In this document: positions 37,020 through 58,900 of the stretch, one piece after another
Layout: each line of letters begins with the position of its first letter
How positions within the stretch are numbered: the stretch's first letter is position 1
IMG/VR virus record: IMGVR_UViG_3300046005_000547
Span: 1 to 64,000 of that record
Reading direction: 5' to 3' (one strand)
DNA length: 64,000 nt
The notes under the pieces: generated by a model
The model's database searches: none
The model's input: only the letters and a program-made list of their open reading frames with translations
Told to the model about the DNA's origin: nothing
Translations under genes and position numbers: made by a program

Positions 37020-37078
37020 TTTGTATTTCCAATAATAAAGTTCAAAGTTGATGTATAATATAAATCAAGAGTAATTTG

Positions 37079-37151
37079 TGGGACTACTTGGATTCAAACC
37101 AAGAATTGCTTCGCTTATGAGGCGAGTCCTTTTTCATTAAGGTATAGTCCC
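37079..37151 (-). tRNA. tRNA with CAT anticodon (Met or Ile2), atypical
   Basis: GGGACTA/TAGTCCC acceptor stem, CTCATAA loop, CTTGG-TTTGAAT-CCAAG T arm; D loop lacks GG; no encoded CCA. Confidence 0.75.
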
Positions 37152-37281: not shown

Positions 37282-38082
37282 ATGTTAAACATAAAACAAT
37301 TGTTCGCGCAATATGGTGTAATAGTGAAAGAATCAAAATATCTTAAAATATATGAATCTTTAATGAATTCTCCTCCTGATACAGAAGGATATACCGAAAC
37401 GCATCATATAATACCAAAATGTATTTCTAACGATAACAAAAAATCTAATTTAATTGAAATTTCAGGAAGAAAACATTTTATATGTCATTACTTGTTATGT
37501 AAAATACTTGAAAAAGATACAAAATTTTGGTATAAATTAAATCACGCATTTATTAGATTTGGTTCGAATAATCTAAGTGGTAGATATTATAATTCTAGAT
37601 TATATGAATCTAAACGTAAAAATTTCTCTTCGGTTATGTCAAAATGTCAATCCGGTGAATTAAATTCACAATACGGTAAAATATGGATTTGTCATCCATA
37701 TTCAATTAAACCAACCATAATTTCACCAAATATGTTTGATGAATACTATAATCAAGGATGGTTATTAGGTAGGACAATAAAACATCCAAAAATTAAAAAA
37801 ATTTCTAAACGCGAAATGGAAAATTATGTAGATCCATATAAAGAAAGAGCATTAAAAACAATTTCTTTATTTTTATCTGGTGAATTTTATTCGATAAAAG
37901 AATTTGTAGAAACATCCAATGACAACACTTTAACAGTAAGCAATTTATCTGTACTATGGAGTTCAAAATTTCCTGATTATAAATCGTTCGCAAAATCAAA
38001 TATGGGTGTTAGGAAATCTTCAAAATATTGTAGAGAGTTCCTAAATCATTTAATTGACGACAAATTTATAGAATTAAATTAA
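37282..38082 (+). mobile_element. free-standing HNH homing endonuclease
   Basis: YTETHHIIPK...HFICHYLL..., SQYGKIWICH (NUMOD-like); inverted relative to neighbours. Confidence 0.85.
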
Positions 38083-38240: not shown

Positions 38241-38597
38241 TCAAATCTTATTTTTAACATATGGTAATTCATTCAGGAACATCAGACAACATACAGCATG
38301 AGCTAGATGAGATAGTCCTGTTTCAGAATCTGTTAATTCCCCGCGTTTCCAAGCCCACATATGACGTTGTGCTGCGTCAAAGTAACGATTCTCTCCGTCT
38401 TCAACATACATCCAATTATTTTCTGAATATTTCTGAGACCCAAATGTAAGTACCTTAACGACTTCATCTAATGAAATTGGAGGTAACAATCCATATTTGT
38501 TTTTACCAACATCAAACTTTCTACCAATTTCAGGGACATCTTGTTTAACATCATTCTTCATTTCATTGGATTGTTCCACATTTTGCTCCTTTAACAA
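38241..38597 (-). CDS. dATP/dGTP diphosphohydrolase (DUF5664-like)
   Basis: GRKFD.GK..YGLLP...FGSQKY..NNW...RH...GLSHLAHA.CCLMFL. Confidence 0.85.
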   Translation of the reverse strand: MLKEQNVEQSNEMKNDVKQDVPEIGRKFDVGKNKYGLLPPISLDEVVKVLTFGSQKYSENNWMYVEDGENRYFDAAQRHMWAWKRGELTDSETGLSHLAHAVCCLMFLNELPYVKNKI

Positions 38598-41500
38598 TAG
38601 AGATATCCCCTGTTAATACATTTTGATATGCCATACCATATTCAACAAATTTATCCGATTCCATCTGAGATAATTTAGTGTCAGTTTGTTTGTCTAACAT
38701 CGGTTTAAAGTAATCGGATACATTTTGTTGCGTTGAGTCATCATAATTGAATTGAATGCTTCCAACTGTATATTCTTCTTTAATTACAACAGGAGTCGTT
38801 TGATAATTGTTCGATTCATCAAACGAACGTAATTTGTTGATTGTAGTCTGATTCATTTTCTATCCTTCTGTTGGTCCATGGTAAATAGAGATTCTAATTT
38901 TATCGCCGTAGCTGATTCTTCTCATGTAGTATCGTTTTACCCGTTTCATATCAATTCTGACTTTCTTTTTAGAATGTCTTGGTTTTCTGATTGGGTGGAT
39001 ACCAAATACAAATTCTAACATTGGGTGTTGTAATACATTTGCCGACATTTTGATTCCTCTCTTAATTTAATAACAATGATACCATTCGAATTGTTAAAAC
39101 AAGTTTATTACCATATTTTCTTTCATAACCAACAGAACCGTTTTCCATCAACTTTTTATGAACATTTGTTGGAATATCGTCTAATCCTGTATGTTCACGA
39201 AACTCAATTAAAGATGGTTCGTCGGCAAAGAGTTTTACAACAGGATTATTATACCATCCTTCTATAGTTACACAATATACATAAGAAGATGTTTCTGGTT
39301 TTGATAATTCCTTTTGATATTGTTTTAAAATATCAACGACATCTGATACGTCTTCATTTCTAACGATTAGTTCTGAATTAACACCAACTATTTCAATATC
39401 ACATTTAGATTTGTATACATTGAAATCTTTATATGTTTCGAACTTAGTTATTTGTTCATTTTTCTTTTGGTAGAAATCATATTTGAATGTTCCTGAACCT
39501 AATGTTCCGATCCAATCATAATTAGATATAGACTCTTCAACATTTTCAATCAATTCTGAGGTTGAACCGATATACATTATTTTGTTTGAAATGATATTGC
39601 GAGCAAATGCTTCATATCCATTTTTCTGGAACACTTCAGGATCTTGATTCTTTTTAAAGATGTCAAATAATTGTTCTATTTCAGATTTCATGTAATTCCT
39701 CTTTCAGTTAATTTAAACAACAAATCTATTCTACTACATTTTAGTTCGAAAGTAAAGTCTTTATTTTAATCTTACCCAAGCCTTACTTGATGTGTAATCA
39801 TGGAACCTAATGAACAAATTTATTTTGTAAAATGATAATGTCGTGAATTAGAGCCCAGATTAGATTCTGTTTGTAATTTACACAATAAACGTTAGGATCT
39901 TTCTTCATAACAATCCTTTAATTTCATCGAAGAAGGTGTTAAAATGAATCTTTGGTATTGTTACCCCATTTCCATCAGATTCATTTAATATAAAGATATT
40001 GTCATCATAATCCGATAATTGGAATGATTCATTTAATGTTCTCATTTCAACATATTTACCAACTCTGTAAATCATTACATGTTGAACATCGTTTTGTTGG
40101 AACTTATCTATAAATTTGAATTCGGAATCTAATGTTAAAACAACAATATGTAGTGAATCTTCATATTCAAAGAAAGAACCAATTTGGTCAGAATCATCTA
40201 ACACTAATCCGACGGTAGAGTTTTCAACATATTCTAACGTAAATCCAGATTTGTTGAATTCTTTAATTGATACAACAATTTTATCACAAGACATCGTGTT
40301 TCCCTTGTAAGAAATTGGACGAAGACATTAATACGCATCCAAACATTATCGCATAAGATTGCCAATGTAAAAATGGTTGTTCATAAATTATCATTAATGT
40401 AACAATCACTAACGATAATCCAAACATCTCAATCGATTTATATATTTTCATAACTTATCTCTTATGTCAAGTAACCAATTTCGCAATTTTTTATCTTTGT
40501 TGGTTATATGTTTGAGTAGGATACCATCAGCAATTTGTTCATGTATATACCAGAACGGATACGTAATGAAATATGTTATACCACCAAATAATGCCAACGG
40601 AGAAATTGTAATTGCGTAGATAACCCAATAGATTAAATGTAAAATTCTATTCTTCATTATTGTTCCCAATATCCGATTTCATTTAAGATTAAAAATCGTT
40701 TAATTTCAACACTATGTCCAGGCGTTACTATAACGTAAAAGTTTGTTTCTTCGCCAGAATCATCCTCTTCTACTCCAACTCTGAACGATAACGTATCATT
40801 GAGATACAAATCCATTTTCTTATCACCAGAAGGTTCTTCTTTTGTTACAACATATCTGACACCAGGAATCTTTAATGTTTGTTCTTTGTTAAAACGTAAC
40901 ATGTTAATCTTCATAAGATTCTCTGTAAATTACGACAATATCACCAGATTCCATCAATTGTACAACTTTCTGGACATTTTCTTCATGCATCTCATCAGCT
41001 TGATTATCCATGTCATCCCGTAATTCCGATTTAGATAATCCTCTGTTACAATTCAAGTAGATTTCTTTGGTTACATCTGTTTCAATATATCCATTTTCTT
41101 CGACAGCAAAGAATGTCATTGTTTCGTATACTCTATCGCATCCAATTTCAAGTAATGTTTCTGTTGAATTTCCATTTGAATCTAAACGAACCATATTACC
41201 AACAGAACTCACTACAACTTGATATGTTCCATCTGAGATAAGAGTGTTACGACGATACAAACATCTATCTGCGCAGATAAAATGACCAGCCCATCCGCGT
41301 TCTTTAATTGTAATACCCATTTATTTCTCCTCGACACATTTAATGTAATTGAATGATTTTTGTAATTTGATTGGAACATTTTTATTGTAATCAGATAATG
41401 ATTTATTCGCTCTGATGATTTCCTTCTTACATTCAGGAACAGTCTTAAATGTTTTATCATTATTAAATGTAACAATTTGTTGATTGAATACATTTATGAT

Positions 41501-41599
41501 TAAGAATATCAATTTGATTTTCATATAAACCTCGCTTGTTAAGTTGAAAGTATTATAAATGTTAAAATGTATCTTAGAAAGATAAACATAATAATTAAA

Positions 41600-43780
41600 G
41601 TCGAGGAAGACACTATAAGAATATAAAGAAAACTTAATTGAATCTATAGAACTAACTCAAACCGTCGACATAGTCTAGTATACTGTCTTTTTATCGATTT
41701 CGAAAGGAGTTTCTAGATGGATGTAATTTACACATTCGATGTCCTTAAGACTCTTTCGATACGTGATTATAATTGATTCGATGTTGTCGTTTAAAATGAC
41801 CGTCCATATTTGGATTTTAAGGTGTATTAAATGTATCCTGTAGAGTTGATTGGTGTATATTGGAAACGTTCCATTAAGGTGGATTATTGGACAAATAATG
41901 GATGTTAACGAATCAACATAGACTATTATAATATGAAATTGAATCTAATAAAAATCCTGATGGAATGGTTGGTTCTCATCAGGATTTGGAAGCAGAGATT
42001 TTAATGTTGAATTATTGTATAGAATATACTCGATAAAGACAATAATATGTTCTTGTAGTAATATATTAATGTCTATAAAGAATCTAAAAGAATATTAGAA
42101 AAGCAATAGATACACTAACTGAAACGTCGACATAGTCTAGTATACTGTCTTTTCTAGGATTTCGAAAGGAGTTTCTAATCGTTGATGTTTACATACTCGA
42201 TGTTAAAGATTATCGAATGTCATCTTAAGACTCTTTCGATACATGATGTTTACAGTTTCGATGTAATCGTTAAATCCTGCCCAATTATTTGTTGATTTAA
42301 GAACGATTCATTGTATCTTGTAGACTTGATTGGCATAATACAGAAAAATTCCACTAGAGTCCATTAACGAGCAAATAATGGATGTTAATGATTCGTCCAA
42401 CAATATCAATTCTTAAAATTTCAAACAATAAAAATCCCGACAGAATTTGTTCATTCTTATCGGGATCTGATACGCAGAGATTATATGTTGTTTAATTGTA
42501 TAGAATATTACTATAATAATTCGATAAAGAGTCTTGAAGTAATATAATAAAATCTAAAAGTGTTATTAAAGGTAATAACTGAAACGTCGACATAGTCTAC
42601 TATAACGATATTTCCTCGAAAAGTCAAGAAGTATTTTTATGTTGATATTTACATACTCGATGCCTTAGATTATCCTTCGATGTTCTTGTATGTCTTTCAA
42701 TACATGATTATAGTTGATTCGATGTTATCATTAAATCCTACATGGAAATTTGCCAATATAAGACGAGTTAAATGTATCCTGTAAGTTGATTGACATAATA
42801 CAGGAATATTCCACTAGGATGGATTAACGAGCAAATAATGGACATTAACAATTCAACATAGAACCAATATATTGTAAATTTTATCTAATAAAAATCCCGA
42901 AAGAACTTTTGATTCAATCGGGATCTGACGCGCAGAGATTTTAATGTTGAATAATTACTCGATAAAGACATATTAATACTCTTGTAGTAATATAATAAAG
43001 TCTATAAAGAGTCTTGAAGTAATATAGAAAAATACTAAAAACCATTAATAACTCTACCTGAAACATCGACATAGTCTAGTATACTGTCTTTTTATCGATT
43101 TCGAAAGGATTAACTTTACCCTGTAATATACATACTCGATATCCTTTTCATCTTTAAGACTCTTTCGATACATGATTATTACTCATTCGATGTTAACAAT
43201 TATTATAGACATCCATATTTGGATTTTAAGATGGGTTATATTGTTGACATAGAGTTGATTGTTATAACATGAAAAGATTCCATTAAGATGGATTAACGAG
43301 CAAATAATGGATGATATAGAAGTAATATACAATTACAAAATCTGTAAATTTTATCTAATAAAAATCCCGACAGAATTGTTCATTCTTATCGGGATCTGAG
43401 ACTCAGAGATTTTATGTTCTTTAATTGTATAGAATATTGATATATTAATGCATATAAAGAACCTTGTAGTAATATAGAAGACAATAAAAGAAAACCTAAA
43501 AACAATAGATACATTAACTGAAACGTCGACATAGTCTAGTATATCCGAGTTTTATCGATTTCGAAAGGATTATCTTTACCCTGTAATAATCAAACTCGAT
43601 GTTTAAGATTATCGAATGTCATCTTTAAGACTCTTTCGATACATGATTATAGTTGATTCGATGTTAACATTTAATCCTACATGGAAATTTGCCAATATAA
43701 GATGGATTCAGAATATCCTGTAGAGTTGATTGATGTATATCATTAAAATCATTTTAACTTGGATTAACATTCAAATTTAC
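41600..43780. repeat. array of five ~460-480 bp degenerate tandem repeats (non-coding)
   Basis: core (g/a)tcgacatagtcta at 41664, 42126, 42586, 43065, 43525; recurring gactctttcgatac, gagttgattg, caaataatgga and aataaaaatccYga..tcRggat motifs. Confidence 0.92.
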
Positions 43781-43836
43781 ATCATAAATAATCTTATTGT
43801 ATACATTAAATCATAGACTACATGAACACTTTGATT

Positions 43837-43845
43837 TAATAAATA
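43837..43845 (+). promoter_or_regulatory. T4-late-like promoter TAATAAATA
   Basis: upstream of gp18; the same 9-mer precedes gp19 (46174) and gp22 (50983). Confidence 0.6.
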
Positions 43846-43890
43846 ATAATAAAGAACAAATATATCTCATACACAATAAGGAATTCCTAT

Positions 43891-46107
43891 ATGTCATACC
43901 AAATTTCACCTGGAATCGTGTCTAACGAAATCGATAATGCTATCGTAACAGTAGCCGTGAAATCTCCAGCTGCCGCTTTTGCTGGCGTCTATAGATGGGG
44001 TCCTGTTATGGAACCAACTACCATCAATTCAGAAAAAGCATTGTTGGAACAATTCTTCAAACCAAACAACGTAGATAACGTAACACGAGATTTCCATACG
44101 GCATCGAATTTCTTATCATATTCTGATAATTTATTAAATGTTCGATTAGATACTCTTGGTAACAGAAACGCAGTTGCTCGTCCTTTAATTACAACGAATG
44201 ATTCAATTAAATTCACTGTAACAGGTGGAACTGAAAAAACATTTACCGTTACAACACAAACAACCATTGCTGAAATCGTCACCGAAATTAATGCAGATGT
44301 TGTTTTGAATTTATTGGTACAAGCCAAAGAATTCAAAGGTAAATTAATCTTAACATCAGTTGACACAGCAAAATCTGTTATTGGTAGTTATTTCAGTGGT
44401 GCTACTTTAGTTACCGCCGGCGTAACGACTCCTGTTAATGGTCCAACTGCTGGTTTCGTTACCATCTTACCTGGATCTTCAATTAAAGTCAACAACGATG
44501 ACGCTTACGAAACAAGTTACATCAATGGTGAAGCAAACATCGGCGAATTCATTGCCAAATATCCTGGAACAATTGGTAACTCTATCGGTGTTATCGTTTT
44601 AGATAACAATACATTCGATTACAGTACATTAACTGGTTCGATTACTTCAATTGTAAGTTCTAAAGTTGTCACTGGTTCTGATACTTTATTCACAAAAGAA
44701 TTAGTTCCAGGATCTATTGTTAAATCATCTGCTGGTTCTGTAATTGGCACTGTATCTTCTGTTGAATCTGATACATCATTGACTTTGACCTTGGAAACAC
44801 AAACTCCAGTTTCCGCTATGACAAATGCAAGAGTATCGATTGCTGAAGAATATTCTGCTCTATTCAAAAAACCTTCTACAACTCTTTATGCTAAATCAAG
44901 AAACGTTACCAACGCTCTTGATGAAATTCATATCTTGGTTATCGATAAAGAAGGTACAATCACAGGTGTTCCAGGTTCTATCTTAGAAAAATACTCTTAT
45001 CTTTCTAAAGCAGCTGACGCAAGAAAAGAAGACGGCACTTCTGCTTATTACAAATCTGTAATCAACGCAAGTTCTGATTATATCCGTTGGACAGACCACC
45101 CAACTTCTTTAGGTTCTACTGGATATATCTGGGGTTCTAGATTAGAAGATATGCCCGCTGATTCTTCGTTCAAAACATTAGTTCGTCCGCTCAACATTCA
45201 ATTTGTTGGTGGTAAAGATGATTTTGAAGTTCTTGAAGCAAACATCTTAGATGCATATGCTTTATTGAAAAACAAAGAACAATTCAAATTCAAATTCTTA
45301 ATTACGGGTAAAGCGACTTCTGTTGTAGCAAAATATGCTATCCAAAGTGTCGCTGAATTCAGAAGAAACTGTGTTGCATTTATCTCCCCAATTGATGCCA
45401 TCACAGATGAAATCATTATTGGTAATACTTCTTCTGCTGTAACTAAAATCATTGAATTTAGAGATACATTACCATCAAGTTCATGGGGTGTATTAGATTC
45501 AGGATACAAATACCAATACGATCGTTTCAATGATAAATTCATCTGGGTTCCATTGAATGGTGATATTGCTGGTTTAGCTGCTAGAGTAAATGAACCTTGG
45601 GATTCTCCTGCCGGTTTCTCTAAAGGTCAAATCAAAAATGTTGTGAAATTAGCTGTTAATCCAAACAAAGCCGATAGAGACGCATTATATCCAAGTGGTA
45701 TCAATCCAGTTGTTTCTTTCAAAGGTCAAGGCACTATTCTATATGGTGATAAAACATTATTAGATAAACCTTCAACATTTGATAGAATCGGTACAAGAAT
45801 GTTATTCATCTTCTTAGAAGAATCTATTGAAAAAACAGCTCAATATACATTGTTTGAAATGAATGATGAATTTACAAGAACTCAATTCCGTAATGCGGTA
45901 GAACCTTTCTTGAAAGACATCAAAGGTCGTCGAGGCGTTTATGATTTTAAAGTGATTTGTGATTCTACGAATAACACTGCTGGTGTAGTTGAAACAAATA
46001 ACTTCGTAAGTGATATTATGATTAAACCACAATATAGCATCTCATTTATCACCCTCAACTTTATTGCCACTCGTCAATCTGCGTCATTCTCGACAACTGG
46101 TGCATAA
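43891..46107 (+). CDS. 18: tail sheath gp18
   Basis: SPGI...E.D, WGP, KYPGTIGN, SGYKYQYDRFND, PAGFSKG, RDALY..GINPV, GDKT. Confidence 0.97.
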   Translation: MSYQISPGIVSNEIDNAIVTVAVKSPAAAFAGVYRWGPVMEPTTINSEKALLEQFFKPNNVDNVTRDFHTASNFLSYSDNLLNVRLDTLGNRNAVARPLITTNDSIKFTVTGGTEKTFTVTTQTTIAEIVTEINADVVLNLLVQAKEFKGKLILTSVDTAKSVIGSYFSGATLVTAGVTTPVNGPTAGFVTILPGSSIKVNNDDAYETSYINGEANIGEFIAKYPGTIGNSIGVIVLDNNTFDYSTLTGSITSIVSSKVVTGSDTLFTKELVPGSIVKSSAGSVIGTVSSVESDTSLTLTLETQTPVSAMTNARVSIAEEYSALFKKPSTTLYAKSRNVTNALDEIHILVIDKEGTITGVPGSILEKYSYLSKAADARKEDGTSAYYKSVINASSDYIRWTDHPTSLGSTGYIWGSRLEDMPADSSFKTLVRPLNIQFVGGKDDFEVLEANILDAYALLKNKEQFKFKFLITGKATSVVAKYAIQSVAEFRRNCVAFISPIDAITDEIIIGNTSSAVTKIIEFRDTLPSSSWGVLDSGYKYQYDRFNDKFIWVPLNGDIAGLAARVNEPWDSPAGFSKGQIKNVVKLAVNPNKADRDALYPSGINPVVSFKGQGTILYGDKTLLDKPSTFDRIGTRMLFIFLEESIEKTAQYTLFEMNDEFTRTQFRNAVEPFLKDIKGRRGVYDFKVICDSTNNTAGVVETNNFVSDIMIKPQYSISFITLNFIATRQSASFSTTGA

Positions 46108-46206
46108 TTTACAATTATGACAAGGAGAATCTTGGGAACAATAATACGTTCTCAAGATCTCTGTAATCTTATGTAATAAATAAAATAAAACAAATAAGGA
46201 ACAATA

Positions 46207-46839
46207 ATGGCTAACACTATTGAAAATTTCAAATCGCAATTAAAACGCGGTGGTGCCAGAGCAAACCAATATCGTGTTGGTATTACAGCAAACACTGCTG
46301 CTGCGGATTCAACTATTGTACCAACTGGATTTGATACCACTGGTAATTTACTTTTATGTAAAGCGTCTTCAATCCCATCTTATACAATTGCTCCAGTTGA
46401 AGCAAAGTATAGAGGTAAGACTGTTTATTTCGCTGGTGAAAAATCATTCACTCCATGGACATTAACATTCTATAACAATAATGCATTTGAATTACGCGGA
46501 TTGTTTGAGAATTGGTCTTATACGATTGCTGAAAACGATTCAATCGGTGGTGAATTAACGCATTCGGCTTATTCTGCTATGTTACATGTAGACCAAATGG
46601 ATCGTAACGGTGGTTTGTTAAGAACATATACATTCCATAATGCATTTCCGACTAATGTTGGCGAAATTGCCTTGGGATACGACAACGAAAATGCTATCGA
46701 AGAATTTGATGTGGAATTCACATACGATTATTTTGTTGACATGGATAACAAAAATTCAAGTAAAGTAACTAAAACGAAAGACAATACAATTCATTCTCCT
46801 TCTGAAGGATTTGAAAATTCAGCATCTACTGAAGGTTAA
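46207..46839 (+). CDS. 19: tail tube gp19
   Basis: FKSQL.RGGARANQY, LCKASSIP, GEKSFTPW, IEEFDVEFTYDYF. Confidence 0.95.
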   Translation: MANTIENFKSQLKRGGARANQYRVGITANTAAADSTIVPTGFDTTGNLLLCKASSIPSYTIAPVEAKYRGKTVYFAGEKSFTPWTLTFYNNNAFELRGLFENWSYTIAENDSIGGELTHSAYSAMLHVDQMDRNGGLLRTYTFHNAFPTNVGEIALGYDNENAIEEFDVEFTYDYFVDMDNKNSSKVTKTKDNTIHSPSEGFENSASTEG

Positions 46840-46841
46840 TT

Positions 46842-49727
46842 ATGGATATTTTCGGAATTTCTATTAAAAAGAAATCCGATAAAATGAAGAGGGTGGATTC
46901 ATTTATTCCACCTTCTAATGATGATGGTTCTATTGTATCAACTTCTTCATTTTACGGATTATCATTAGATTTAGATGGAGCTGTAAAAGATGAAAATGAA
47001 TTAATTAGAAGATATAGACAAGCCGCAGAATATCCTGATTGTTCTAATGCCGTAGAGGAAATCGTTAATGAAGCAATTTCCGTTTCGTCTGATGATGCTC
47101 CTGTTACATTAAATCTTAATCATATCGAATCTTTATCTGAAAATGTAAAGAAAGCTATGGCAAAGGAATTCAGCATTATCTTGGATCTATTTGATTTTCA
47201 AGATAAAGGATACGATACATTCAGACAATGGTATATTGACGGTAAGGTTTATTTCCATGCCGTAGTTGACACTGAATCTCCAAAAAAAGGTATCCAGGAA
47301 TTAAGATATGTGGATCCAAGGAAGATTAGAAAAATCAAGGAAATGGTTGTTGAAAAGGATTCCCATGGTAACGATATTAAAAAGTCGGGTGAAACGTATT
47401 ACTTGTTTAATGATTCTGGTATCAATGCTGCAGCCAAATCTGGTGTTAAACTATCTTTAGAATCTGTTTTCTGCGCTACGTCTGGTATCGTTGATTATAA
47501 CACAGGAATGATTAGAAGCCATTTACATAATTCCATCAAAATTATCAATTCATTAAAATATACAGAAGAATCGCTGGTAATCTATAGAGTATCTAGAGCA
47601 CCTGAACGTAGAGTATTTTACATCGATGTAGGTAATTTAAATAAAGCTAAGGCAGACCAATATATCCAAGATACAATGGCTCGGTTTAGAAATAAATTAG
47701 TTTTCAACAGCACAACTGGTGAAATTAATGATAATAAACAGAACCAATCAATGATGGAAGACTATTGGTTACCTCGTAGAGATAATTCAAAAACAACTGA
47801 AATCACTACGTTACCAGGCGGATGTCTATCAATGGACACTAAAGTTTCATTATTAGATGGTAGAGAAATTACAATTTCTGAAATTGAACAAGAAATGAAA
47901 ACTGGTAAAGAACTTTGGGTTTATTCTTGCGATGAATTTACTGGTCAAATAAAACCTGGATTGATTACTTGGGCTGGAACGACGCAGAAATCTGCTAAAG
48001 TTATGAAAATAACATTAGATAATGGTGAATCTTTAATTTGTACACCAGACCATAAATTTCCAATTTATGGTAAAGGATTTGTTGAAGCGAAAGATTTAAT
48101 GATTGATGAATCGATGATACCATTATATCGGAAACACGAACAAATATCAAAAGCAAAAAAACGAGGATATGAACAATTTTTCGATAATCATAAAAAAGAA
48201 TGGGTATTCACTCATAGAATGGTTTGTGATGAATTGAAAGATAAGAAGATTTTCGATTATGTATATGATGAAGAATACAAAGATAGAACTAAAAATGTAA
48301 GACATCATATTGATTGTAATAGATTCAATAATAATCCAAACAATTTATGTTTTATGTCTTGGGATGACCATGCTAAACTTCATTCAGATTTATCGTTTAG
48401 TGAAGAAGCATACATGCTCGGAACTAGAGCTGCGGCGGAAAAACTTCGTATAATGAAAATTGAAGATCCAGATGCATATAAAAAACGTTCTGATGAAATT
48501 GGATTAAGAACCATGGAATGGCATGCTTCATTGAATGAAACGGAAAAACAAGAATTTATTGAATCTTTAAAAAAAGGTAATACTGAATATTGGGAAAATA
48601 TTTCTGAAGATTTGAGGGAACATAGAGCTAATGTATCTAGAACAAATGCATATTTGGGTATGTTATCGACTCAACACAAGTTACAAACAGATCCAATTTT
48701 TTATGAATTTTTTTGCGAACAAAATCGTAAATCTTGGGATGATGAACGTAGATTAAAATCCGCAAATATTACCAAAATAATTAGTACAGAACGATGGTTG
48801 TTGAGAGGTGACGAATTAAGAAAAAAACACAAAGAAAATCAAAAACTAGAAATTGATAATTTTATTTTCAAGAAAATAGTGGATTTAATCGCAAATAAAT
48901 CAACGTATAAAATTACATTAGAAGATGTAGTCAATTCATTAAATAATAATGAAGAATGCGTGTCTAGATTGATTGAATTGAACCAACATAAACATATTCC
49001 CAATTATGATGTGTTGGAAGGATTCACTAACAATAATGTTTCTAGATGTGTTAAAGATTATGGATATAAACATTGGATGGATTTTAGACAGAAATTCAAA
49101 TATCACAATCACAGAATTATTGATATTGAATATCTAGATGAAGAAATTGAAGTTGGTACATTAACTATCGACGGAGACGAATTATATCATAATCATCATA
49201 CATTTGCTTTGACTTGTGGAATTTTCACTAAAAATTCGAATTTGTCCGACATATCGGATGTAACTTACTTCCAGAATAAATTGTTTAGATCTCTTCATGT
49301 GCCTATTACAAGATTGATTCCTGAACAATCATTTTCTATTGGTAGAGCAGGTGAAATCACCAGAGATGAAATTAAATTCTCTAAATTCATCACTAGATTA
49401 CGTTCTAAATTTTCAAAAATCTTCATGGAAGCATTGAGATTACAATGTGTTCTGAAAGGAATTATATCTTATGAAGATTTCTCTACGATAGAAAAACAAA
49501 TTAGATTCAACTTTCATGATGATAATCATTTTGCTGAATTATCTGAATCTGAAGTCCTACAAAATAGATTAGCTACATTACAACTTGTTGATACATACGT
49601 TGGTAAATACTTCGATACAAATTGGGTCAAGAAAAATATATTGAAACAATCTGATGAAGAAATTCAAGAAATCCAAGAACGGATGGACGAAGAAAAACCA
49701 CTTATGGAACCAACCGAAGAAGAATAA
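46842..49727 (+). CDS. 20: portal gp20 containing an intein
   Basis: WYIDG, YRVSRAPERRVFYIDVGNL, EDYWLPRR, EITTLPGG; ~490 aa after removing the intein. Confidence 0.97.
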   Translation: MDIFGISIKKKSDKMKRVDSFIPPSNDDGSIVSTSSFYGLSLDLDGAVKDENELIRRYRQAAEYPDCSNAVEEIVNEAISVSSDDAPVTLNLNHIESLSENVKKAMAKEFSIILDLFDFQDKGYDTFRQWYIDGKVYFHAVVDTESPKKGIQELRYVDPRKIRKIKEMVVEKDSHGNDIKKSGETYYLFNDSGINAAAKSGVKLSLESVFCATSGIVDYNTGMIRSHLHNSIKIINSLKYTEESLVIYRVSRAPERRVFYIDVGNLNKAKADQYIQDTMARFRNKLVFNSTTGEINDNKQNQSMMEDYWLPRRDNSKTTEITTLPGGCLSMDTKVSLLDGREITISEIEQEMKTGKELWVYSCDEFTGQIKPGLITWAGTTQKSAKVMKITLDNGESLICTPDHKFPIYGKGFVEAKDLMIDESMIPLYRKHEQISKAKKRGYEQFFDNHKKEWVFTHRMVCDELKDKKIFDYVYDEEYKDRTKNVRHHIDCNRFNNNPNNLCFMSWDDHAKLHSDLSFSEEAYMLGTRAAAEKLRIMKIEDPDAYKKRSDEIGLRTMEWHASLNETEKQEFIESLKKGNTEYWENISEDLREHRANVSRTNAYLGMLSTQHKLQTDPIFYEFFCEQNRKSWDDERRLKSANITKIISTERWLLRGDELRKKHKENQKLEIDNFIFKKIVDLIANKSTYKITLEDVVNSLNNNEECVSRLIELNQHKHIPNYDVLEGFTNNNVSRCVKDYGYKHWMDFRQKFKYHNHRIIDIEYLDEEIEVGTLTIDGDELYHNHHTFALTCGIFTKNSNLSDISDVTYFQNKLFRSLHVPITRLIPEQSFSIGRAGEITRDEIKFSKFITRLRSKFSKIFMEALRLQCVLKGIISYEDFSTIEKQIRFNFHDDNHFAELSESEVLQNRLATLQLVDTYVGKYFDTNWVKKNILKQSDEEIQEIQERMDEEKPLMEPTEEE
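47823..49235 (+). mobile_element. 471-aa intein with HNH endonuclease
   Basis: starts CLSMDT, block B TPDH, ends FTKN followed by Ser; internal RHHIDCNRFNNNPNNL. Confidence 0.92.
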
Positions 49728-49740
49728 CACGGAGAAACAC

Positions 49741-49893
49741 ATGGAAAACGAATTATTAACTGCATTAGAAAATGGCGACGTTTTACAAATTCAAGAATCT
49801 TTTGATAAAATTATGTTAGACAAAGTTGGTCAACGCATGAATGAAAAAAAGAAAGAAATCGCCAAAACATTATTCAATAAAACAGAAGAATAA
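49741..49893 (+). CDS. small prohead core protein (gp67-like by position)
   Basis: MENELL...helical 50 aa between gp20 and gp21. Confidence 0.55.
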   Translation: MENELLTALENGDVLQIQESFDKIMLDKVGQRMNEKKKEIAKTLFNKTEE

Positions 49894-49895
49894 AA

Positions 49896-50321
49896 ATGGC
49901 ATTCCAAAAACAAATAATCAAGATTTCGTCTAAGGAATGTTGGGTTAAAGTTTGGGGTACTGATGGAGATTCTGGAACTGTTCTATTATCGGAATTAAAA
50001 ACTGCGGATGAAGACATTGTTGGTACCCCAAGAGCAAATATCGCTGGGTATCAATACACTGGTGATAATACCACAACATTCTACATAACGAGAAATGGAA
50101 CTCAAATTGCCACATTTAGTTCTAGTACCATTTCTGTTATAGAAATGACTGGAGCAACTTGTCCACCAGACCCAGTTCAAAATGACCAAAATGTAACTAT
50201 AACAATTCTTGGTGGTAACGGGGAATTATTCCTTAGATTACGGAAACAAGAAGGTTATGTTTCAAAAATAGAAACATCTACATATGGTGCTTATGATAAC
50301 AAAACCGCAGTGGGTTCATAA
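49896..50321 (+). CDS. head-module protein (gp68-like by position)
   Basis: position just before gp21; stop overlaps the gp21 start. Confidence 0.45.
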   Translation: MAFQKQIIKISSKECWVKVWGTDGDSGTVLLSELKTADEDIVGTPRANIAGYQYTGDNTTTFYITRNGTQIATFSSSTISVIEMTGATCPPDPVQNDQNVTITILGGNGELFLRLRKQEGYVSKIETSTYGAYDNKTAVGS

Positions 50322-50974
50322 TGAAACTAATCACAGAATTATCGGAATCCGTTACGTATATTACGGAATCAATCGGCACCAACGATAAAAAACAATACTT
50401 TATCGAAGGTTGTTTTTTACAAGCGGAAACTCCAAACAGAAATGGTCGAAATTATCCCAAACATGTAATGGAACGCGAAGTAAAAAACTTCCAAACATTA
50501 ATCAAAGAAAATCGTTCTACTGGTGAATTGGGACATCCTGATACATTAAACGTAATGCCTGAAAACATTTCTCATCTAATCACTGAATTGAAATTTGATG
50601 GTAACAATGTAATTGGTAAAGCTAAAATCCTAGAATCAATGCCAAAAGGATATATCGCCAAATGTCTATTAGATGAAGGTGTTAAAATTGGCGTTTCTTC
50701 AAGAGGTGTGGGTTCTTTATCTCAACGTAAAGACGGTATCAATGAAGTCCAGGATGACTTCTATCTACGTACAATTGACATTGTATCAGAACCATCTGGC
50801 ATTGATTGCTGGGTTAATGGTATCATGGAAGGCGTTGAATGGGTTAATGTTAATGGCATTTTCACTCAAAAACAATTAGACGAATCAAAACGAATTATCA
50901 AAAAAACTTCATCTTCTGACCTACAAAAAGTTTGTCTTGAACAATTCCAACATTTTCTCAATTCTATCAAGTGA
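50321..50974 (+). CDS. 21: prohead protease gp21
   Basis: MKLITE, NRNGRNY, GELGHP, SH, GVSSRGVGS, DIVSEPS. Confidence 0.96.
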   Translation: MKLITELSESVTYITESIGTNDKKQYFIEGCFLQAETPNRNGRNYPKHVMEREVKNFQTLIKENRSTGELGHPDTLNVMPENISHLITELKFDGNNVIGKAKILESMPKGYIAKCLLDEGVKIGVSSRGVGSLSQRKDGINEVQDDFYLRTIDIVSEPSGIDCWVNGIMEGVEWVNVNGIFTQKQLDESKRIIKKTSSSDLQKVCLEQFQHFLNSIK

Positions 50975-51021
50975 AAATAATTTAATAAATAATTGAATAT
51001 GAATAAAGAATGGAGAATTTA

Positions 51022-51930
51022 ATGACCATCGAACAAAAATTACTAGAGTCGTTACAAAACGGCGAAGCAACGGGAAAAACTATTATGGAATCAATTAGCA
51101 GTTTATTCGAAGGTGAAGAATTTACCGACGACTTTAAAGCTAAAGCATCGGCGATCTTTGAATCTGCTGTTGTCAACAAAGCTAAATCTATGACCGATGA
51201 ATTAGAATCAATCTATGAATCTAAATATTCTGAATTAGAATCATCTTATGAAACTAAACATGAAGAATTAAGTTCAATCTATGAATCTAAATTTGATGAA
51301 TTAGAAACAACTTTCGAAACCAAATTCATTGATTTCCAACAAGTTAATGAAGCTGTATTCAACAAACAACATGAAGCATTATCTGAACAAATTGATGGAT
51401 ACTTAGATTATGCGTCTCAATCTTGGATTGATGCAAACAAAGTTGCTGTTGAATCAGGTTTGAAATCTGAAATTGTTGAAGGTTTCATTACCAACATGAA
51501 AGGTCTTTTTGAATCAAGTTACATCGATCTTCCATCTGCTCAATTAGATGTTGTCAAAGAATTAACTGAAGAAAATGAAACTCTCAAAGCTCAGTTAAAA
51601 GAAACTGTTGATTCTACAATCAAATACAAACGTGAAATTGAATCTACCAAACGTTCTGCTATCATTGAAGAATTCACTTCTGCATTAACATTAGTTGAAG
51701 CAGACAAATTCCGCGAATTGGCTTCTGAATTATCTTTCACGGATAATGACAAATTCCGCACAAAATTACATACAATCACTGAACACTACTTCAAGAAAGA
51801 TACCAAACCAACTGGCATCTCTCCTGTAACAGATACTCCTGTTTTAACTGAAGAATTTATCGTTACTCCAACAAGTTCAGATTCAAATGTCTCAGCATAT
51901 GTTGCTGCTCTTAGCCGTTACACAAACTAA
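51022..51930 (+). CDS. 22: prohead scaffold gp22
   Basis: acidic coiled coil, FKAKASAIFESAV, DGYLDY; likely start MTIEQ after GGAG. Confidence 0.9.
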   Translation: MTIEQKLLESLQNGEATGKTIMESISSLFEGEEFTDDFKAKASAIFESAVVNKAKSMTDELESIYESKYSELESSYETKHEELSSIYESKFDELETTFETKFIDFQQVNEAVFNKQHEALSEQIDGYLDYASQSWIDANKVAVESGLKSEIVEGFITNMKGLFESSYIDLPSAQLDVVKELTEENETLKAQLKETVDSTIKYKREIESTKRSAIIEEFTSALTLVEADKFRELASELSFTDNDKFRTKLHTITEHYFKKDTKPTGISPVTDTPVLTEEFIVTPTSSDSNVSAYVAALSRYTN

Positions 51931-51957
51931 TACTATACCAAAAAGGAATTATACAAA

Positions 51958-55901: not shown

Positions 55902-58900
55902 ATGAAAGAAATTATTGAAGAATATCAACAAACTAAAGATTTTGAAAATGTGGTGTATAGAAACGGATTGAATTTGTTGGTCGTTTCTAAATTGTCCGAA
56001 TGTAAATATGAATTGAAATATCAAGGTAATCATAATGAAACTAAAATTATGATTTCATATGTTGATAAAGTGAATGCCGATAATGTTATTGGATACATCA
56101 GTAATTATTACGATGTATTTGAATATGAATCATTCGAAGAAGATGATAAAATTTATATTGTATTTTCTAAAAATGAAATGTACAGTTACGTTCAAGAACA
56201 TAAAAGATTAACAAACAATTATTGTCTGGATAAAGATCCTTCTGTGTTTGAAGGATACCCGTTGGTTTGTTATAGACTTTGTATGTATAATGATACCGAT
56301 ATTGTTATTGAAAATGTATCAAATAGTGAAAAACATAAATTCAATATGCCAAATTCTGATTTTTCTTCATATCAATTGTATGATTATGCAGAAGGATATT
56401 TGAAAGGAATGTCAAACAGTAATTTAGAAGTTACCAGATGTTTTTGTTTAGATGGGACGATGTATCTATTATGTTTTGATATTAACAATAAATTTTATAG
56501 TTCATAATAAATGGAATTTTACTACATACAGGAAATTGTAAATGAATCATAAATGTATAGATTTCAAAAGAATAGACGACGACTTATTTTGCGTCGATTG
56601 TAAGAAACTTATAGACGTTCCAGTTAAAATTGAAGTTGGAAAATGTTATCAGAAATTTGGAACTGAAGATGTATACGAAGCAACTTCATCTAGTGTGGAA
56701 AATGGAGTTGAAAAATTCACACTCATTGGATTAAAGGATAGACATGTAACATTCTATAGGAATTTAGAACCAAGAGATTTGGTGACAAATAGACAATACA
56801 ATCAGATACCAGAATTTTTCAATAAGGAAGTGATTAAACCATTTTACGTTTCCAAGGTTGGTATCTATAAAACGGTTATCGGTGATACTGCGTTGATTAA
56901 ACAGATTGGTGACAAAGATTTATGTTATGGTAGATTGATTGGCGATACGCAAAATCGAAAATGGTATAGAACTGGGAAGGAATCATGTCCACCGGACACT
57001 AGAAATAACAGTTTGATTGAATTTATTGAAGAAGTTACGCTTTACAGTTGAGAATGAATATGATTACAGCATTAGAAGCGTATAAATTGGGTAATACAAA
57101 GAAGCAGATGGAATCTGAACGAATCGATGGATTGGTTGAACAGATGATTACTCGTAAGATTGAACCGTTGGTTAGAAGTAAATCTGCGGACATGAAATGT
57201 GTATTTACATGGCAGCATTTTTCTGATTTTGTTGGTCAAGATGATTTATTTCATTGTTTCAATATATTGAAGGAAAGATTGTTAGGATACGGATACTCGG
57301 TTACCGTATCTGGTAACAGAACAGACCCATTAAAAACAGAGATGTTGGTTAAATGGGAAGAACCTAGAGAAATTGCCAAAGAATATAGTAATACAACAAT
57401 CTCTGAATATGGTAATAATTATGAAAAAGTCTAAGATTACATTAGAATCATTGGTTGAATCGTATAAATTATCTGGTGATGATTCGTTATTATTGGATAA
57501 TGCAGTTACAATAGTTGATGTTAATTGTTCTGGAGACGATATTTTATTGAATTTTGAAGATTACGAATCAACATGGATTAAACATGTTGATAAAATTGAT
57601 ATGGAAACGGATATCCAAGTAGTCATTAGATTTTTGCGTAAAGAATATAATGTAACCGAATATGAAGTGTTCAGAACAAAAGAAGATAAATTAAAATTGG
57701 TATTTGTTCGATATAAGATCGATTCAGATAATTGGAAAACTGAATTGGAAATTATTAAATTTTATCAAACTGGTGATGTTAAATCGTTTGATTTTGATGG
57801 TAAGAAAGTGTTTAGATTATACATCGATGAAATGGAGGATGAAGATTCTAAATACATTATGGATGCCATTGATATTGAAACCGACGAACCAATAATGGGA
57901 TTTTCATATTTGGAAGATAAGGAAACGATAGATTCCGAAGAAGGATTAGATTATCATTTGGGGTTTATTAAGGAAATCGTAAGAGAGGAAACAGGATTAG
58001 TTTGGCATAGAATATTTGATTATGAAGGATATATTCATGTAATGTTCTTGGATAATTTGAATGTTGTAAATTTATCTGATGAATGTATTGAAATTACAGA
58101 CGGTGAAGAACGGGTTATTATTCCCAAGCAGAATATCTTTTGGTTGATTAATCAGATAATGATTATGAGTGGATACGAAAGAGACGATTAAACATGGAAA
58201 ACTGCTTGATAGTGGAATGTTTATAATATATGTCAATCAACTCTACAGGATAACAAAAACAAACATTAATGGAGGATTAAAATGAATTTTACAAAGGTGT
58301 ATTCAAAACAGAGAGGTATCCATCACATATCAGATGACGTTGATGGTTGGATCTTTTTGATTATCGAATCAAAAAGAGGTGGATTCAATTTGTTTTCCAG
58401 TGAAGGTGAACGGAGACAGAATCTAAGGAAAGTTGGGAATTTCAATGATATTGGATCTGCAAAACGATTTGCCATTAAAACAATAGGTGTCTAATGAATA
58501 ATAGAGTATATTTTACATTATTGAATGGAACAGAAACTTGGTTAGGGTGTAATGATATTATTGATGTAATATATGAAAACGATTTGTTGACTAGAATCGA
58601 GTATGAAGACCAAGGTGATTTATTTCCTTATGTAAGAATTAGTCATATAATTGTTATTGGCGGTAAAGAAGATATTCTAAAGAGGATTGAAAATGTTAGG
58701 CAAAAATGATATGGAATTTGTATTGATATTATTATTGTGTGCTAATGTAGGATGATATGTTTAAAATTAAAGTGATTGACCAAGAATTTGATATCAAAGA
58801 AGATGAGATAATCAATACATTGAGAGTTGATATTTCTGGATTGGAAGAAGAATACGATTATGTTTGTCTAGGATCCGGTCAGACAAGAAATAAAATATAT

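What the first reader, a model, noticed from the sequence alone, without database searches (positions are those of the whole stretch)
41600..43780. Five-unit non-coding array of promoter / short-transcript / terminator cassettes at the strand switch
Seen: 2.2 kb with no ORF of 60 aa or more, made of five ~460-480 bp diverged units. Each unit core reads on the minus strand like a promoter: CTTTCGA-N17-TATACTAGA in units 1, 2 and 4, a close variant in unit 5, and TTGACT-N17-TATAGT in unit 3. All five are followed by ATGTCGA. About 165-185 nt downstream of units 2-5 lies a hairpin plus T-run. That stem is atcctga/tcaggat at 41954-41985 but atcccga/tcgggat at ~42434, ~42894 and ~43364, a compensatory double change indicating selection on RNA structure. 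Inference: a tandem array of small-RNA genes (decoy or sponge RNAs, or R-loop primers), or an iteron-type replication origin. T4 origins use promoter-primed R-loops (established). The ATG-initiated ORFs vary from 4 to 48 aa, so a conserved peptide is unlikely. I know of no described element with this layout.
Basis: partly seen in the sequence, partly recalled or inferred. Interest (0 to 1): 0.88.

Follow-up and report, generated by a model that had tools for sequence, protein, structure and literature searches.

The report
Repeated promoter-terminator modules in T4-like phage
The 2.2-kb gene-free stretch is one of seven or eight scattered arrays of a ~470-base non-coding unit (regulated promoter, short leader, terminator); the arrays sit at the head of operons of an uncultured T4-like phage and mark where its genome has been reshuffled, but what they do beyond starting transcription is not settled.

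Summary
Window 41589-43768 holds five diverged direct units (period 460-480 bp) with no ORF of 60 aa or more. On the minus strand each unit has a promoter-like core. Units 2-5 each give a predicted 167-187-nt transcript that ends at a hairpin plus U-run.

The array is not unique. The unit occurs about 24 times in each of two related 235-250-kb T4-like phage contigs, in 7-8 arrays spaced 20-40 kb apart. Arrays point into an adjacent gene cluster. In all seven arrays of the window's phage the last unit lacks the terminator and reads into a gene; one of these reads antisense into the terminase gene.

The unit's promoter is a variant of a phage-wide class, TTTCGATG-N12-TTATAAT-AGA, found upstream of 25 genes. 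Upstream of it lie 3-4 TCGAT boxes about 21 bp apart, a second promoter-like box and TCCA/TGGA repeats.

The hairpin stems covary. The RNA body is the least conserved part, shows no fold signal and has no conserved ORF.

Breakpoints between the two phages fall at arrays, including a ~29-kb late-gene inversion.

Best reading: cis-acting promoter/terminator "homologous regions". An origin role is not excluded. A structured small RNA or a peptide is unlikely. Closest known are the PeSL cassettes and the repeat regions of Campylobacter group II phages.

The parts
41589..43768 (-). Whole array: five tandem ~470-bp non-coding units; the functional strand is minus
   Evidence: nhmmer profile hits; direct-repeat families D1-D13; no ORF of 60 aa or more
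41589..41926 (-). Unit 1, the downstream-most unit; it has no terminator
   Evidence: Covers profile positions 108-468. Its transcript runs on into the gene at 41524
41947..42423 (-). Unit 2 (complete)
42426..42885 (-). Unit 3 (complete; P1 of the TTGACT subtype)
42887..43354 (-). Unit 4 (complete)
43357..43768 (-). Unit 5, the upstream-most unit; its distal TCCA/TGGA block is degenerate
   Evidence: Covers profile positions 2-430; alignment
41677..41705 (-). P1 promoter of unit 1: TTTCGA-N17-TATACT, then AGA
   Evidence: same class as 25 gene-proximal promoters
42139..42167 (-). P1 promoter of unit 2
42599..42627 (-). P1 promoter of unit 3: TTGACT-N17-TATAGT, with TTTCGA shifted into the spacer
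43078..43106 (-). P1 promoter of unit 4
43538..43566 (-). P1 promoter of unit 5
41947..42133 (-). Predicted 187-nt terminated non-coding transcript of unit 2. The first ~20 nt are conserved; the body is U-rich and G-poor
42427..42593 (-). Predicted 167-nt transcript of unit 3
42887..43072 (-). Predicted 186-nt transcript of unit 4
43357..43532 (-). Predicted 176-nt transcript of unit 5
41945..41987 (-). Intrinsic terminator ending the unit 2 transcript (hairpin plus UUUUUAUU)
   Evidence: -15.4 kcal/mol, z -5.9; covariation
42425..42468 (-). Intrinsic terminator ending the unit 3 transcript
   Evidence: -18.1 kcal/mol, z -5.0, against -12.6 on the plus strand
42885..42926 (-). Intrinsic terminator ending the unit 4 transcript
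   Evidence: -16.0 kcal/mol, z -4.4
43355..43397 (-). Intrinsic terminator ending the unit 5 transcript
   Evidence: -17.8 kcal/mol, z -5.2
41736..41782 (+). TCGAT box cluster of unit 1, at about -61 to -124 from the P1 start. Boxes read on the plus strand and lie about 21 bp apart
42197..42262 (+). TCGAT box cluster of unit 2
42657..42723 (+). TCGAT box cluster of unit 3
43136..43191 (+). TCGAT box cluster of unit 4
43596..43662 (+). TCGAT box cluster of unit 5
41841..41852 (-). P2 box of unit 1. On the minus strand it reads CAATCAACTCTA, followed after 5-7 nt by a TAnnnT-like hexamer in most copies. The same box lies at 42321-42332, 43250-43261 and 43721-43732; unit 3 has a copy with a one-base deletion near 42781
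   Evidence: Solo copies sit about 35-50 nt upstream of start codons
41870..41905 (.). TCCA/TGGA tetramer block of unit 1: 3-4 tetramers about 10-11 bp apart in variable orientation. The equivalent block of unit 2 is at 42350-42384, and units 3 and 4 have one as well
   Evidence: Alignment of 55 copies; 77% identical within a phage and 76% between phages
41552..41580 (-). Gene-proximal promoter-like site (TTTCTA-N17-TATAAT) between the unit 1 P1 and the first gene
   Evidence: Read from the sequence. Other arrays have a standard-class promoter at this place
41321..41524 (-). First gene (67 aa, no family match) of the minus-strand gene cluster fed by the array. Its ortholog follows the matching array in the sister phage
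43891..46107 (+). Tail sheath gene (gp18) on the far side of the array. It is not driven by the array and has its own late-type motif TAATAAATAA at 43837-43846
58234..58246 (-). Solo copy of the P2 box outside the array, about 45 nt upstream of a plus-strand start codon near 58292

Best explanation
The region is one array of a dispersed non-coding repeat family, a phage "homologous region". Each ~470-bp unit is a self-contained transcription module on the minus strand.

Unit anatomy, read 5' to 3' on the minus strand:
1. A block of TCCA/TGGA tetramers.
2. A second-class promoter-like box (CAATCAACTCTA-N5-TAnnnT).
3. Three to four TCGAT boxes on one face of the helix, at about -61, -82, -101 and -124.
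4. Promoter P1, a variant of the phage's main TTTCGA...TATAAT-AGA class.
5. A 20-nt conserved start of the transcript.
6. A ~130-nt variable U-rich body.
7. An intrinsic terminator.

How it most likely works. RNA polymerase starts at every unit, probably with a factor that recognises the TCGAT box; this box also forms the -35 region of the phage's ordinary promoters. Internal units are insulated from one another by their terminators and yield only short non-coding RNAs of about 130-200 nt. The last unit has no terminator and reads, together with a gene-proximal promoter, into the operon. The stack therefore acts as a cis-regulatory hub at operon heads.

Because the arrays are dispersed homologous sequences in both orientations, they are also the substrates at which homologous recombination has inverted and moved genome modules.

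Shown: the anatomy, the family size, the position and orientation relative to operons, the promoter-class membership by sequence, the terminator covariation and the breakpoints.

Inferred: that P1 and P2 fire, that a protein binds the boxes, and that the benefit is transcriptional.
For: Family and distribution:
- The core motif gives about 24 exact copies in each of two contigs.
- The unit profile finds 7 arrays in the window's phage and 8 in its relative, plus solo fragments.

Orientation and linkage:
- In all seven arrays of the window's phage the downstream-most unit lacks a terminator and reads into a gene with a ribosome-binding site and ATG.
- The array-to-first-gene linkage is conserved between the two phages.

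Promoter:
- TTTCGA-N16/17-TATAMT occurs 11 times in the window against 0.21 expected.
- 25 gene-proximal members of the class lie roughly 30-80 nt upstream of start codons, in the gene direction, including upstream of the DNA polymerase gene.
- P1 shares the -35 element, the -10 element and the AGA that follows.

Terminator:
- Strong hairpins followed by a U-run on the minus strand only. Three of four are more stable as minus-strand RNA.
- Compensatory pairs, and G-U pairs that are valid only on that strand.

Boxes:
- TCGA is six-fold enriched: 15.6 per kb against 2.6 per kb elsewhere.
- TYCGATR boxes lie 12:2 on one strand.
- Their spacing peaks at 20-22 and 39-42 bp.

Conservation:
- It is highest at the core and transcript start (92% within a phage, 83% between phages), the P2 box, the TCCA/TGGA block and the terminator.
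- The RNA body (69% / 62%) is only about as conserved as the unit's spacer segments.

Recombination:
- The ~29-kb late-gene segment is inverted between the two phages and is bounded by inverted arrays. Further breakpoints also fall at arrays.
Against: - There are no expression data. The host is unknown and the phage is uncultured.
- TTTCGA matches only 3 of 6 positions of the usual sigma-70 -35 hexamer, so the polymerase or factor requirement is unknown.
- The model does not explain why 2-5 insulated, apparently unproductive units are kept at each site, each under its own purifying selection.
- Phased boxes next to a 23% G+C stretch are also the classic layout of a replication origin.
- The P2 box is followed by a gene in only about half of its solo copies.
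- Two units fire antisense into the 3' end of the terminase gene instead of into an operon.
- Only two phage lineages carry the family, so comparative power is limited.
Confidence: 0.5

Rival explanations
1. Replication origins. Each unit is an origin module: phased TCGAT iterons bind an initiator. The adjacent promoter activates or primes replication, and the 130-bp AT-rich transcribed stretch is the unwinding element. Seven or eight arrays would give a multi-origin genome, as in T4.
For: - Boxes lie about 21 bp apart on one helix face.
- The transcribed body is 23% G+C against 31% for the window.
- A promoter followed by an AT-rich region is the layout of the T7 primary origin and of T4 oriF/oriG (established knowledge).
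- One array per ~30 kb is close to the origin density of T4 (established knowledge).
- Baculovirus hr arrays are both enhancers and origins (established knowledge).
Against: - The conserved part of each box is only 8-10 nt, and the same box serves as the -35 region of 25 ordinary promoters.
- No initiator gene was recognised among the ten genes next to the array.
- The RNA is 8% G and 46% U, which is a poor composition for a persistent R-loop.
- A selected terminator is not needed for an origin.
- GC skew does not switch at arrays flanked by co-directional genes. This test is weak for T4-like phages.
Confidence: 0.2
2. Small-RNA genes. The ~130-200-nt terminated transcripts are the product. 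They would act in trans as decoys or sponges (for example for an RNA chaperone, an RNase or a leader-binding factor) or as antisense regulators.
For: - Promoter and terminator are both kept under selection in every internal unit.
- The first 20 nt of the RNA are the best conserved part of the unit.
- Copy number is high, with at least 15 terminated units in the window's phage.
Against: - The RNA body (69% within a phage, 62% between) is no better conserved than the unit's spacer segments, far below the core.
- The body is built of a variable number of ~30-nt sub-repeats.
- It shows no thermodynamic fold signal: mean z -0.09 over 29 RNAs, and the antisense strand is the same.
- RNAalifold finds only the terminator.
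- There is no Rfam match.
- The conserved 5' end overlaps the promoter and start site, so it may be a DNA signal.
Confidence: 0.13
3. Mostly passive repeats. The arrays would be empty regulatory cassettes left by PeSL-like gain and loss of small genes and kept by recombination, with no function of their own beyond that of the last promoter.
For: - Some arrays do hold genes between units: homing-endonuclease genes and a small conserved gene.
- Unit numbers differ between matching arrays of the two phages.
- Breakpoints fall at arrays.
Against: - Units are old: about 70% identical, and no more alike within an array than between arrays.
- Yet each unit keeps the same conserved blocks and a compensated hairpin. 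That pattern indicates purifying selection on individual internal units.
- Both lineages keep about 4% of the genome in this form.
Confidence: 0.12
4. Array of small peptide genes, for example leaderless hydrophobic peptides starting at the conserved ATG, or type I toxin-antitoxin-like repeats such as the E. coli LDR loci.
For: - The ATG lies at the predicted transcript start.
- Units 3-5 have 33-48-codon hydrophobic ORFs from it.
Against: - ORF length runs 4, 12, 33, 43 and 48 codons within this array.
- Nearly all copies in the sister phage, and the terminal units, stop after 4 codons.
- No frame on either strand is open and conserved across the 55 copies.
- The hydrophobic look follows from an RNA that is 46% U.
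Confidence: 0.03

Closest known systems
PeSL (promoter-early stem-loop) cassettes of T4-type phages RB49/phi1 (Arbiol et al. 2010, PMC2839356)
   Same: A repeated intergenic family in a T4-type genome that combines a sigma-70-like promoter with a terminator stem-loop. It insulates neighbouring transcription units and serves as a substrate for homologous recombination that reshuffles the genome.
   Different: - PeSLs are compact single cassettes, with the stem-loop within or next to the promoter, and they flank individual small genes.
- Here the unit is ~470 bp and occurs in tandem arrays, mostly without genes.
- The terminator lies ~170 nt downstream of the promoter.
- The unit carries extra elements: phased TCGAT boxes, a second promoter-like box and a TCCA/TGGA block.
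- Mini-circles were not testable.
Repeat regions RR1-RR4 of Campylobacter group II T4-related phages CP21/CP220/CPt10 (Hammerl et al. 2015, PMC4546147)
   Same: Several closely related non-coding repeat regions of 1-3 kb divide a low-G+C T4-related genome into modules of tens of kb. Some enclose genes. Unit numbers vary. Modules are inverted between related phages. Single units occur elsewhere in the genome. The function is unknown.
   Different: - Their units are 72-86 bp with the core AAACTTAAAGCAA, which is absent here. Here the units are 460-480 bp.
- No promoter/terminator anatomy was described for them.
- They have four regions against seven or eight here.
- The phages are only distantly related (no DNA match; sheath identity below 50%).
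Baculovirus homologous regions (hrs)
   Same: Dispersed arrays of tandem repeats at about eight sites around a large viral genome. They bind a viral transactivator, enhance early promoters, act as origins in assays and are recombination sites. This is the best functional analogy. It rests on established knowledge and was not tested here.
   Different: Eukaryotic virus; ~70-bp units with an imperfect palindrome; no built-in promoter/terminator pair; no sequence relation.
Transcription-primed phage origins (T4 oriF/oriG, T4 oriE, T7 primary origin)
   Same: A promoter followed by an AT-rich stretch. T7 uses two tandem promoters. T4 oriE is reported to lie among short repeats. T4 has several origins per genome (established knowledge).
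   Different: Those are single sites, not arrays of 2-5 terminated units. The RNA here is G-poor and ends at a selected terminator. No origin activity is known.

Membership tests
PeSL regulatory cassette (T4-type phages) | Strong sigma-70-like early promoter in a repeated intergenic motif | tested here: met
   P1 is present in all five units and belongs to a class with 25 gene-proximal members. Activity was not measured.
PeSL regulatory cassette (T4-type phages) | Stem-loop terminator inside or directly beside the promoter elements (compact cassette) | tested here: not met
   The hairpin lies 165-185 nt downstream of P1 and about 280 nt upstream of the next P1.
PeSL regulatory cassette (T4-type phages) | Cassettes flank individual small genes in hyperplastic regions | tested here: not met
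   Units are head-to-tail without conserved ORFs. Only a few arrays enclose a gene.
PeSL regulatory cassette (T4-type phages) | Recombination between copies reshuffles the genome | tested here: met
   The inversion and translocation breakpoints between the two phages coincide with arrays.
Campylobacter group II phage repeat regions | Several related repeat regions split a T4-related genome into modules; modules are inverted between relatives | tested here: met
   7-8 arrays per genome, 20-40 kb apart; a ~29-kb module is inverted.
Campylobacter group II phage repeat regions | 72-86-bp units with the 13-nt core AAACTTAAAGCAA | tested here: not met
   Units are 460-480 bp. The core is absent from the window even with one mismatch allowed.
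Iteron-type replication origin | Three or more direct repeats in helical phase | tested here: inconclusive
   3-4 TCGAT boxes lie 20-22 bp apart. However, only 8-10 nt of each is conserved, and the box doubles as the -35 element of ordinary promoters.
Iteron-type replication origin | Adjacent AT-rich unwinding element | tested here: met
   The transcribed body is 23% G+C over about 130 bp.
Iteron-type replication origin | Cognate initiator and measurable origin activity | not testable with these tools
   No initiator-like family was found in the ten adjacent genes. There is no skew switch. No experimental data exist.
Bacterial or phage small regulatory RNA | Own promoter and intrinsic terminator | tested here: met
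Bacterial or phage small regulatory RNA | Conserved sequence or structure in the RNA body | tested here: not met
   Mean z is -0.09. Only the terminator is found by RNAalifold. The body is 62-69% identical, the level of the unit's spacer segments. There is no Rfam hit.
Type I toxin-antitoxin / LDR-like repeats | Conserved small hydrophobic ORF in each repeat | tested here: not met

The most novel reading that the evidence does not exclude
The arrays are the phage counterpart of baculovirus hrs. A phage-encoded protein would bind the phased TCGAT boxes, the same box that marks the phage's own promoters. The 7-8 arrays would then work as combined enhancer hubs and transcription-activated replication origins. 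Through their dispersed homology they would also seed recombination-dependent replication and module flipping. A variant of this reading: the abundant U-rich terminated RNAs titrate a host RNA-binding factor.
Probability: 0.22. Interest if true: 0.8.

Novelty: new variant of a known kind. Interest (0 to 1): 0.55.

Why it matters
Phage genomes are normally packed with genes. Here two related 235-250-kb T4-like phages each keep about 4% of their DNA as some 24 copies of a long non-coding unit, with signs of selection on each copy.

The arrays show, in one sequence family, three things that are usually studied apart:
- how a large lytic phage organises the heads of its operons;
- which short box defines its own promoter class;
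- where its genome breaks and rejoins during evolution.

If the arrays also proved to be origins or enhancer hubs, they would offer a bacterial-virus model for the hr elements of large eukaryotic viruses. They might also explain the so far unexplained repeat regions of Campylobacter T4-like phages.

On the practical side, such arrays break assemblies and can mislead synteny-based classification of uncultured jumbo phages.

Tried and rejected
- Leaderless peptide or type I toxin-like reading of the conserved ATG. Rejected: ORF lengths run from 4 to 55 codons. The sister phage and the terminal units stop after 4 codons. No frame is conserved.
- Plus-strand promoter TTAAGA-N17-TATAAT found by the consensus scan. 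Rejected: its -10 region is not conserved across copies, and the hairpins have no U-run on that strand.
- Conserved fold in the RNA body. None was found. Rfam gave no match at E up to 1.
- Long-range pairing between the inverted motif copies that flank P1 (pairs I2-I9). Rejected: complementarity within a unit equals that between units (10.1 against 10.2 of 14). It is a shared DNA motif, not a stem.
- GC-skew switch at arrays with co-directional flanks. None was found.
- Close or distant DNA relatives among GenBank phages. None were found.
- More distant carriers of the family. Two pattern scans of viral contigs and one of metagenome contigs gave only the two lineages plus chance hits.
- Paralogy of the first genes behind the arrays. 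None, apart from one weak pair.
- Pfam families in the ten genes downstream of this array. Only one real hit, a dATP/dGTP diphosphohydrolase domain.
- The core of the Campylobacter phage repeats. Absent.
- The built-in terminator scan found nothing, because these hairpins have interrupted stems and larger loops than it allows. Direct folding recovers them.
Full report
**What is there.** The window is the first 64 kb of a 234,735-bp IMG/VR contig (IMGVR_UViG_3300046005_000547; coordinates coincide). It belongs to an uncultured T4-like myovirus of about 31% G+C.
- Right of the finding lie tail sheath, tail tube, portal and major capsid genes on the plus strand. A gp43-type DNA polymerase gene lies on the minus strand.
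- No GenBank phage matches the region at DNA level.
- The sheath is less than 50% identical to any GenBank phage. The capsid protein is about 60% identical to those of cyanomyoviruses.

- Between the minus-strand gene that starts at 41524 and gp18 at 43891 there is no ORF of 60 aa or more.
- The stretch consists of five diverged direct units with a 460-480-bp period.
- The array is identical in three independent assemblies.

**It is a family, not a one-off.**
- The core motif TCGACATAGTCTANNATA has about 24 exact copies in this contig and 24 in a 249,362-bp contig of a sister phage with 90% sheath identity. Single hits in other contigs are chance: none matches a profile of the unit.
- The profile places seven arrays in the window's phage (phage A), at about 42, 73, 105, 141, 162, 196 and 229 kb, with 2-5 units each. 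It places eight arrays in the sister phage (phage B), plus a few solo fragments. This is roughly 4% of each genome.
- Inside the 64-kb window this is the only array. One solo fragment lies at 58234-58246.

**Anatomy of the unit (minus strand).** Alignment of 55 copies shows conserved blocks separated by variable spacers.
- *P1.* It reads TTTCGA-N17-TATACT followed by AGA. It is a variant of a sharply defined phage promoter class, tcTTTCGATG-N12-TTATAAT-AGATTTCAAGTTGG.
  - The class pattern occurs 11 times in the window against 0.21 expected.
  - In the pieces of both genomes that I hold, 25 members lie roughly 30-80 nt upstream of a start codon, most with a recognisable Shine-Dalgarno motif, in the gene direction. 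One lies upstream of the DNA polymerase gene.
- *Core and transcript start.* The -10 region and the first 20 transcribed bases are the best conserved part of the unit: 92% within a phage and 83% between phages.
- *TCGAT boxes.* Three to four boxes read on the opposite strand, at about -61, -82, -101 and -124.
  - Their spacing peaks at 20-22 and 39-42 bp.
  - TCGA is six-fold enriched in the array.
  - The box is the same as the -35 region of the standard promoters.
- *P2 box.* Further upstream lies CAATCAACTCTA-N5-TAnnnT. Solo copies sit about 35-50 nt before start codons in about half of the cases.
- *TCCA/TGGA block.* Three to four tetramers lie about one helical turn apart.
- *RNA body.* Downstream of P1 the transcript body is about 130 nt and 23% G+C. 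As RNA it is 46% U and 8% G. It is built from a variable number of ~30-nt sub-repeats.
- *Terminator.* The hairpin plus UUUUUAUU folds at -15 to -18 kcal/mol with z of -4.4 to -5.9. Three of four are more stable as minus-strand RNA than as plus-strand RNA.
  - Across 29 copies the stem is kept through CG/UA/AU, GC/AU/GU and AU/CG/UA exchanges.
  - One copy pairs only through a G-U that exists on the minus-strand RNA.
  - Other terminators of this phage have the same ATCCC...GGGAT plus U-run style.

**What it is not.**
- No reading frame on either strand is open and conserved.
- The ATG at the start site opens ORFs of 4-55 codons in the window's phage, but of only 4 codons in nearly all copies of the sister phage and in the terminal units.
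- The RNA body folds no better than shuffled sequence (mean z -0.09).
- RNAalifold recovers only the terminator. Rfam has no match.
- The body is only about as conserved as the unit's spacer segments, far below the core.
- The inverted motif copies that flank P1 do not co-vary within units.

**Context.**
- Arrays face an adjacent gene cluster. Three of the seven arrays of the window's phage sit at divergent strand switches (this one, about 105 kb and about 229 kb); the two at about 162 and 196 kb sit between co-directional genes.
- In all seven arrays of the window's phage the downstream-most unit lacks the terminator.
  - Its ~100-150-nt leader, often with a standard-class promoter inside it, runs into a ribosome-binding site and ATG.
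  - Here the unit 1 P1 at 41677-41705 leads to the 67-aa gene at 41524.
- The first genes are unrelated between arrays, but each is orthologous between the two phages. An array and its operon therefore stay together.
- The genes behind this array have no family match, except one dATP/dGTP diphosphohydrolase domain. That would fit an early, host-takeover type region.
- The exception is the unit beside the large terminase gene. In both phages it fires antisense into the 3' end of that gene.
- A few arrays enclose genes, mostly homing endonucleases.

**Rearrangements.** I compared the pieces of the two genomes.
- The early-gene flank (A 34.7-38.7 kb = B 2.7-7.3 kb) and the terminase flank (A 73.9-75.1 kb = B 40.6-41.8 kb) keep their orientation.
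- The ~29-kb late-gene segment between them (A 43.8-72.5 kb) is inverted in B.
- The segment is bounded in both phages by arrays in inverted orientation.
- Further breakpoints also fall at arrays (A 106.2-110.7 kb = B 174.7-170.2 kb; A 158.7-160.9 kb = B 79.9-77.7 kb).
- Units are old: 71% identical within A, 68% within B and 65% between. They are no more alike within an array than between arrays.

**Interpretation.**
- The best-supported reading is a cis-acting regulatory repeat: stacks of insulated, box-controlled promoter modules at operon heads. Being dispersed homologous DNA, they also serve as recombination substrates.
- I rate this at 0.5. Transcription is inferred from sequence only, and the model does not explain why internal, apparently unproductive units are individually conserved.
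- The origin reading (0.2) fits the layout: phased boxes, a promoter and an AT-rich stretch, with about one array per 30 kb.
  - It has no positive evidence.
  - The G-poor RNA, the selected terminator, the double use of the box as a -35 element and the lack of a skew switch count mildly against it.
- A trans-acting RNA (0.13) is weakened by the poor conservation and lack of structure of the body.
- Passive cassette remnants (0.12) are weakened by block-wise conservation in old copies.
- Peptides are essentially excluded (0.03).

**Comparison with what is known.**
- PeSL cassettes of RB49/phi1 combine a strong sigma-70-like promoter with a terminator stem-loop. They insulate genes and mediate modular shuffling (PMC2839356). 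The present units share these functions but fail the compact-cassette and gene-flanking features.
- The closest phenomenon at genome scale is the set of repeat regions of Campylobacter group II T4-related phages.
  - Four related 1-2.9-kb regions of 72-86-bp units split the genome into modules.
  - Some modules are inverted between phages, and the function is unknown (PMC4546147).
  - Unit size and core differ here, and a promoter/terminator anatomy was not described there.
- Baculovirus hrs are the best functional analogy. This rests on my own knowledge and was not tested.
- I therefore file the finding as a new variant of a known kind. It is not categorically new, and its role beyond transcription initiation and termination is open.

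Noticed in passing
window 9285-9312, 12897-12924, 14027-14054, 23265-23292, 28734-28761 (minus); 61416-61443, 63579-63606 (plus): A sharply conserved promoter class, tcTTTCGATG-N12-TTATAAT-AGATTTCAAGTTGG. It is often followed by a conserved leader with a small hairpin (TTGG...CCAA). It lies roughly 30-80 nt upstream of start codons, including that of the DNA polymerase gene. The -35 part is unlike TTGACA, so a phage factor may be needed.
   Followed up: partly
window 43837-43846; also upstream of the genes starting at 46207, 51010 and 56542: A TAATAAATAA-like motif about 35-50 nt upstream of structural genes. It is a likely late promoter, a variant of the T4 TATAAATA.
   Followed up: no
contig A 43.8-72.5 kb versus contig B 12-39.8 kb (window 43834-55859 = L002/B 39802-29169, reversed): The ~29-kb late-gene module (sheath, tube, portal, capsid and others) is inverted between the two sister phages while both outer flanks keep their orientation. 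Arrays in inverted orientation bound it.
   Followed up: yes
L002 9060-9160 (sister phage) and L099 about 1530-1680 (contig A about 73.9-74.0 kb): In both phages a unit promoter without a terminator fires antisense into the 3' end of the large terminase gene. This is a conserved early antisense arrangement against a late gene.
   Followed up: partly
window 46842-49727 (+): The portal gene is 961 aa. HNH-endonuclease-like matches fall at residues ~433-570, between two portal-matching stretches. This is a possible intein or inserted homing endonuclease.
   Followed up: no
window 37282-38082 (+), 53408-54667 (+), possibly 54687-55871 (+); L002 6331-7482; contig A 72942-73583: Several free-standing homing-endonuclease-like genes. 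Two of them (in L002 and in contig A array 2) lie between repeat units. The window genes at 53408 and 54687 end in similar sequence and may be tandem paralogs.
   Followed up: partly
window 38241-38597 (-): A 118-aa protein with a clear dATP/dGTP diphosphohydrolase N-terminal domain (Pfam PF18909, E 1e-31). To my knowledge this domain is known from phages that modify their purines. No partner genes were looked for.
   Followed up: no
window 37078-37151 (-): A single tRNA-Met (CAT) gene in the minus-strand early region.
   Followed up: no
window 53334-53347 region (after the capsid gene), 61387-61400; contig A 233170-233205 and 233340-233385: Terminators across the genome share the same stem ends and tail (ATCCC...GGGAT plus TTTTTATT), as if they were one family. 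Some are bidirectional.
   Followed up: no
window 41669-41671 and equivalents; L002 5950-5960, 9110-9120, 9590-9600: In terminal units, and in nearly all units of the sister phage, the conserved ATG at the predicted transcript start opens a 4-codon mini-ORF (ATG TCG AYN NTT TGA). In internal units of the window's phage the stop is lost through a G-to-C change.
   Followed up: partly
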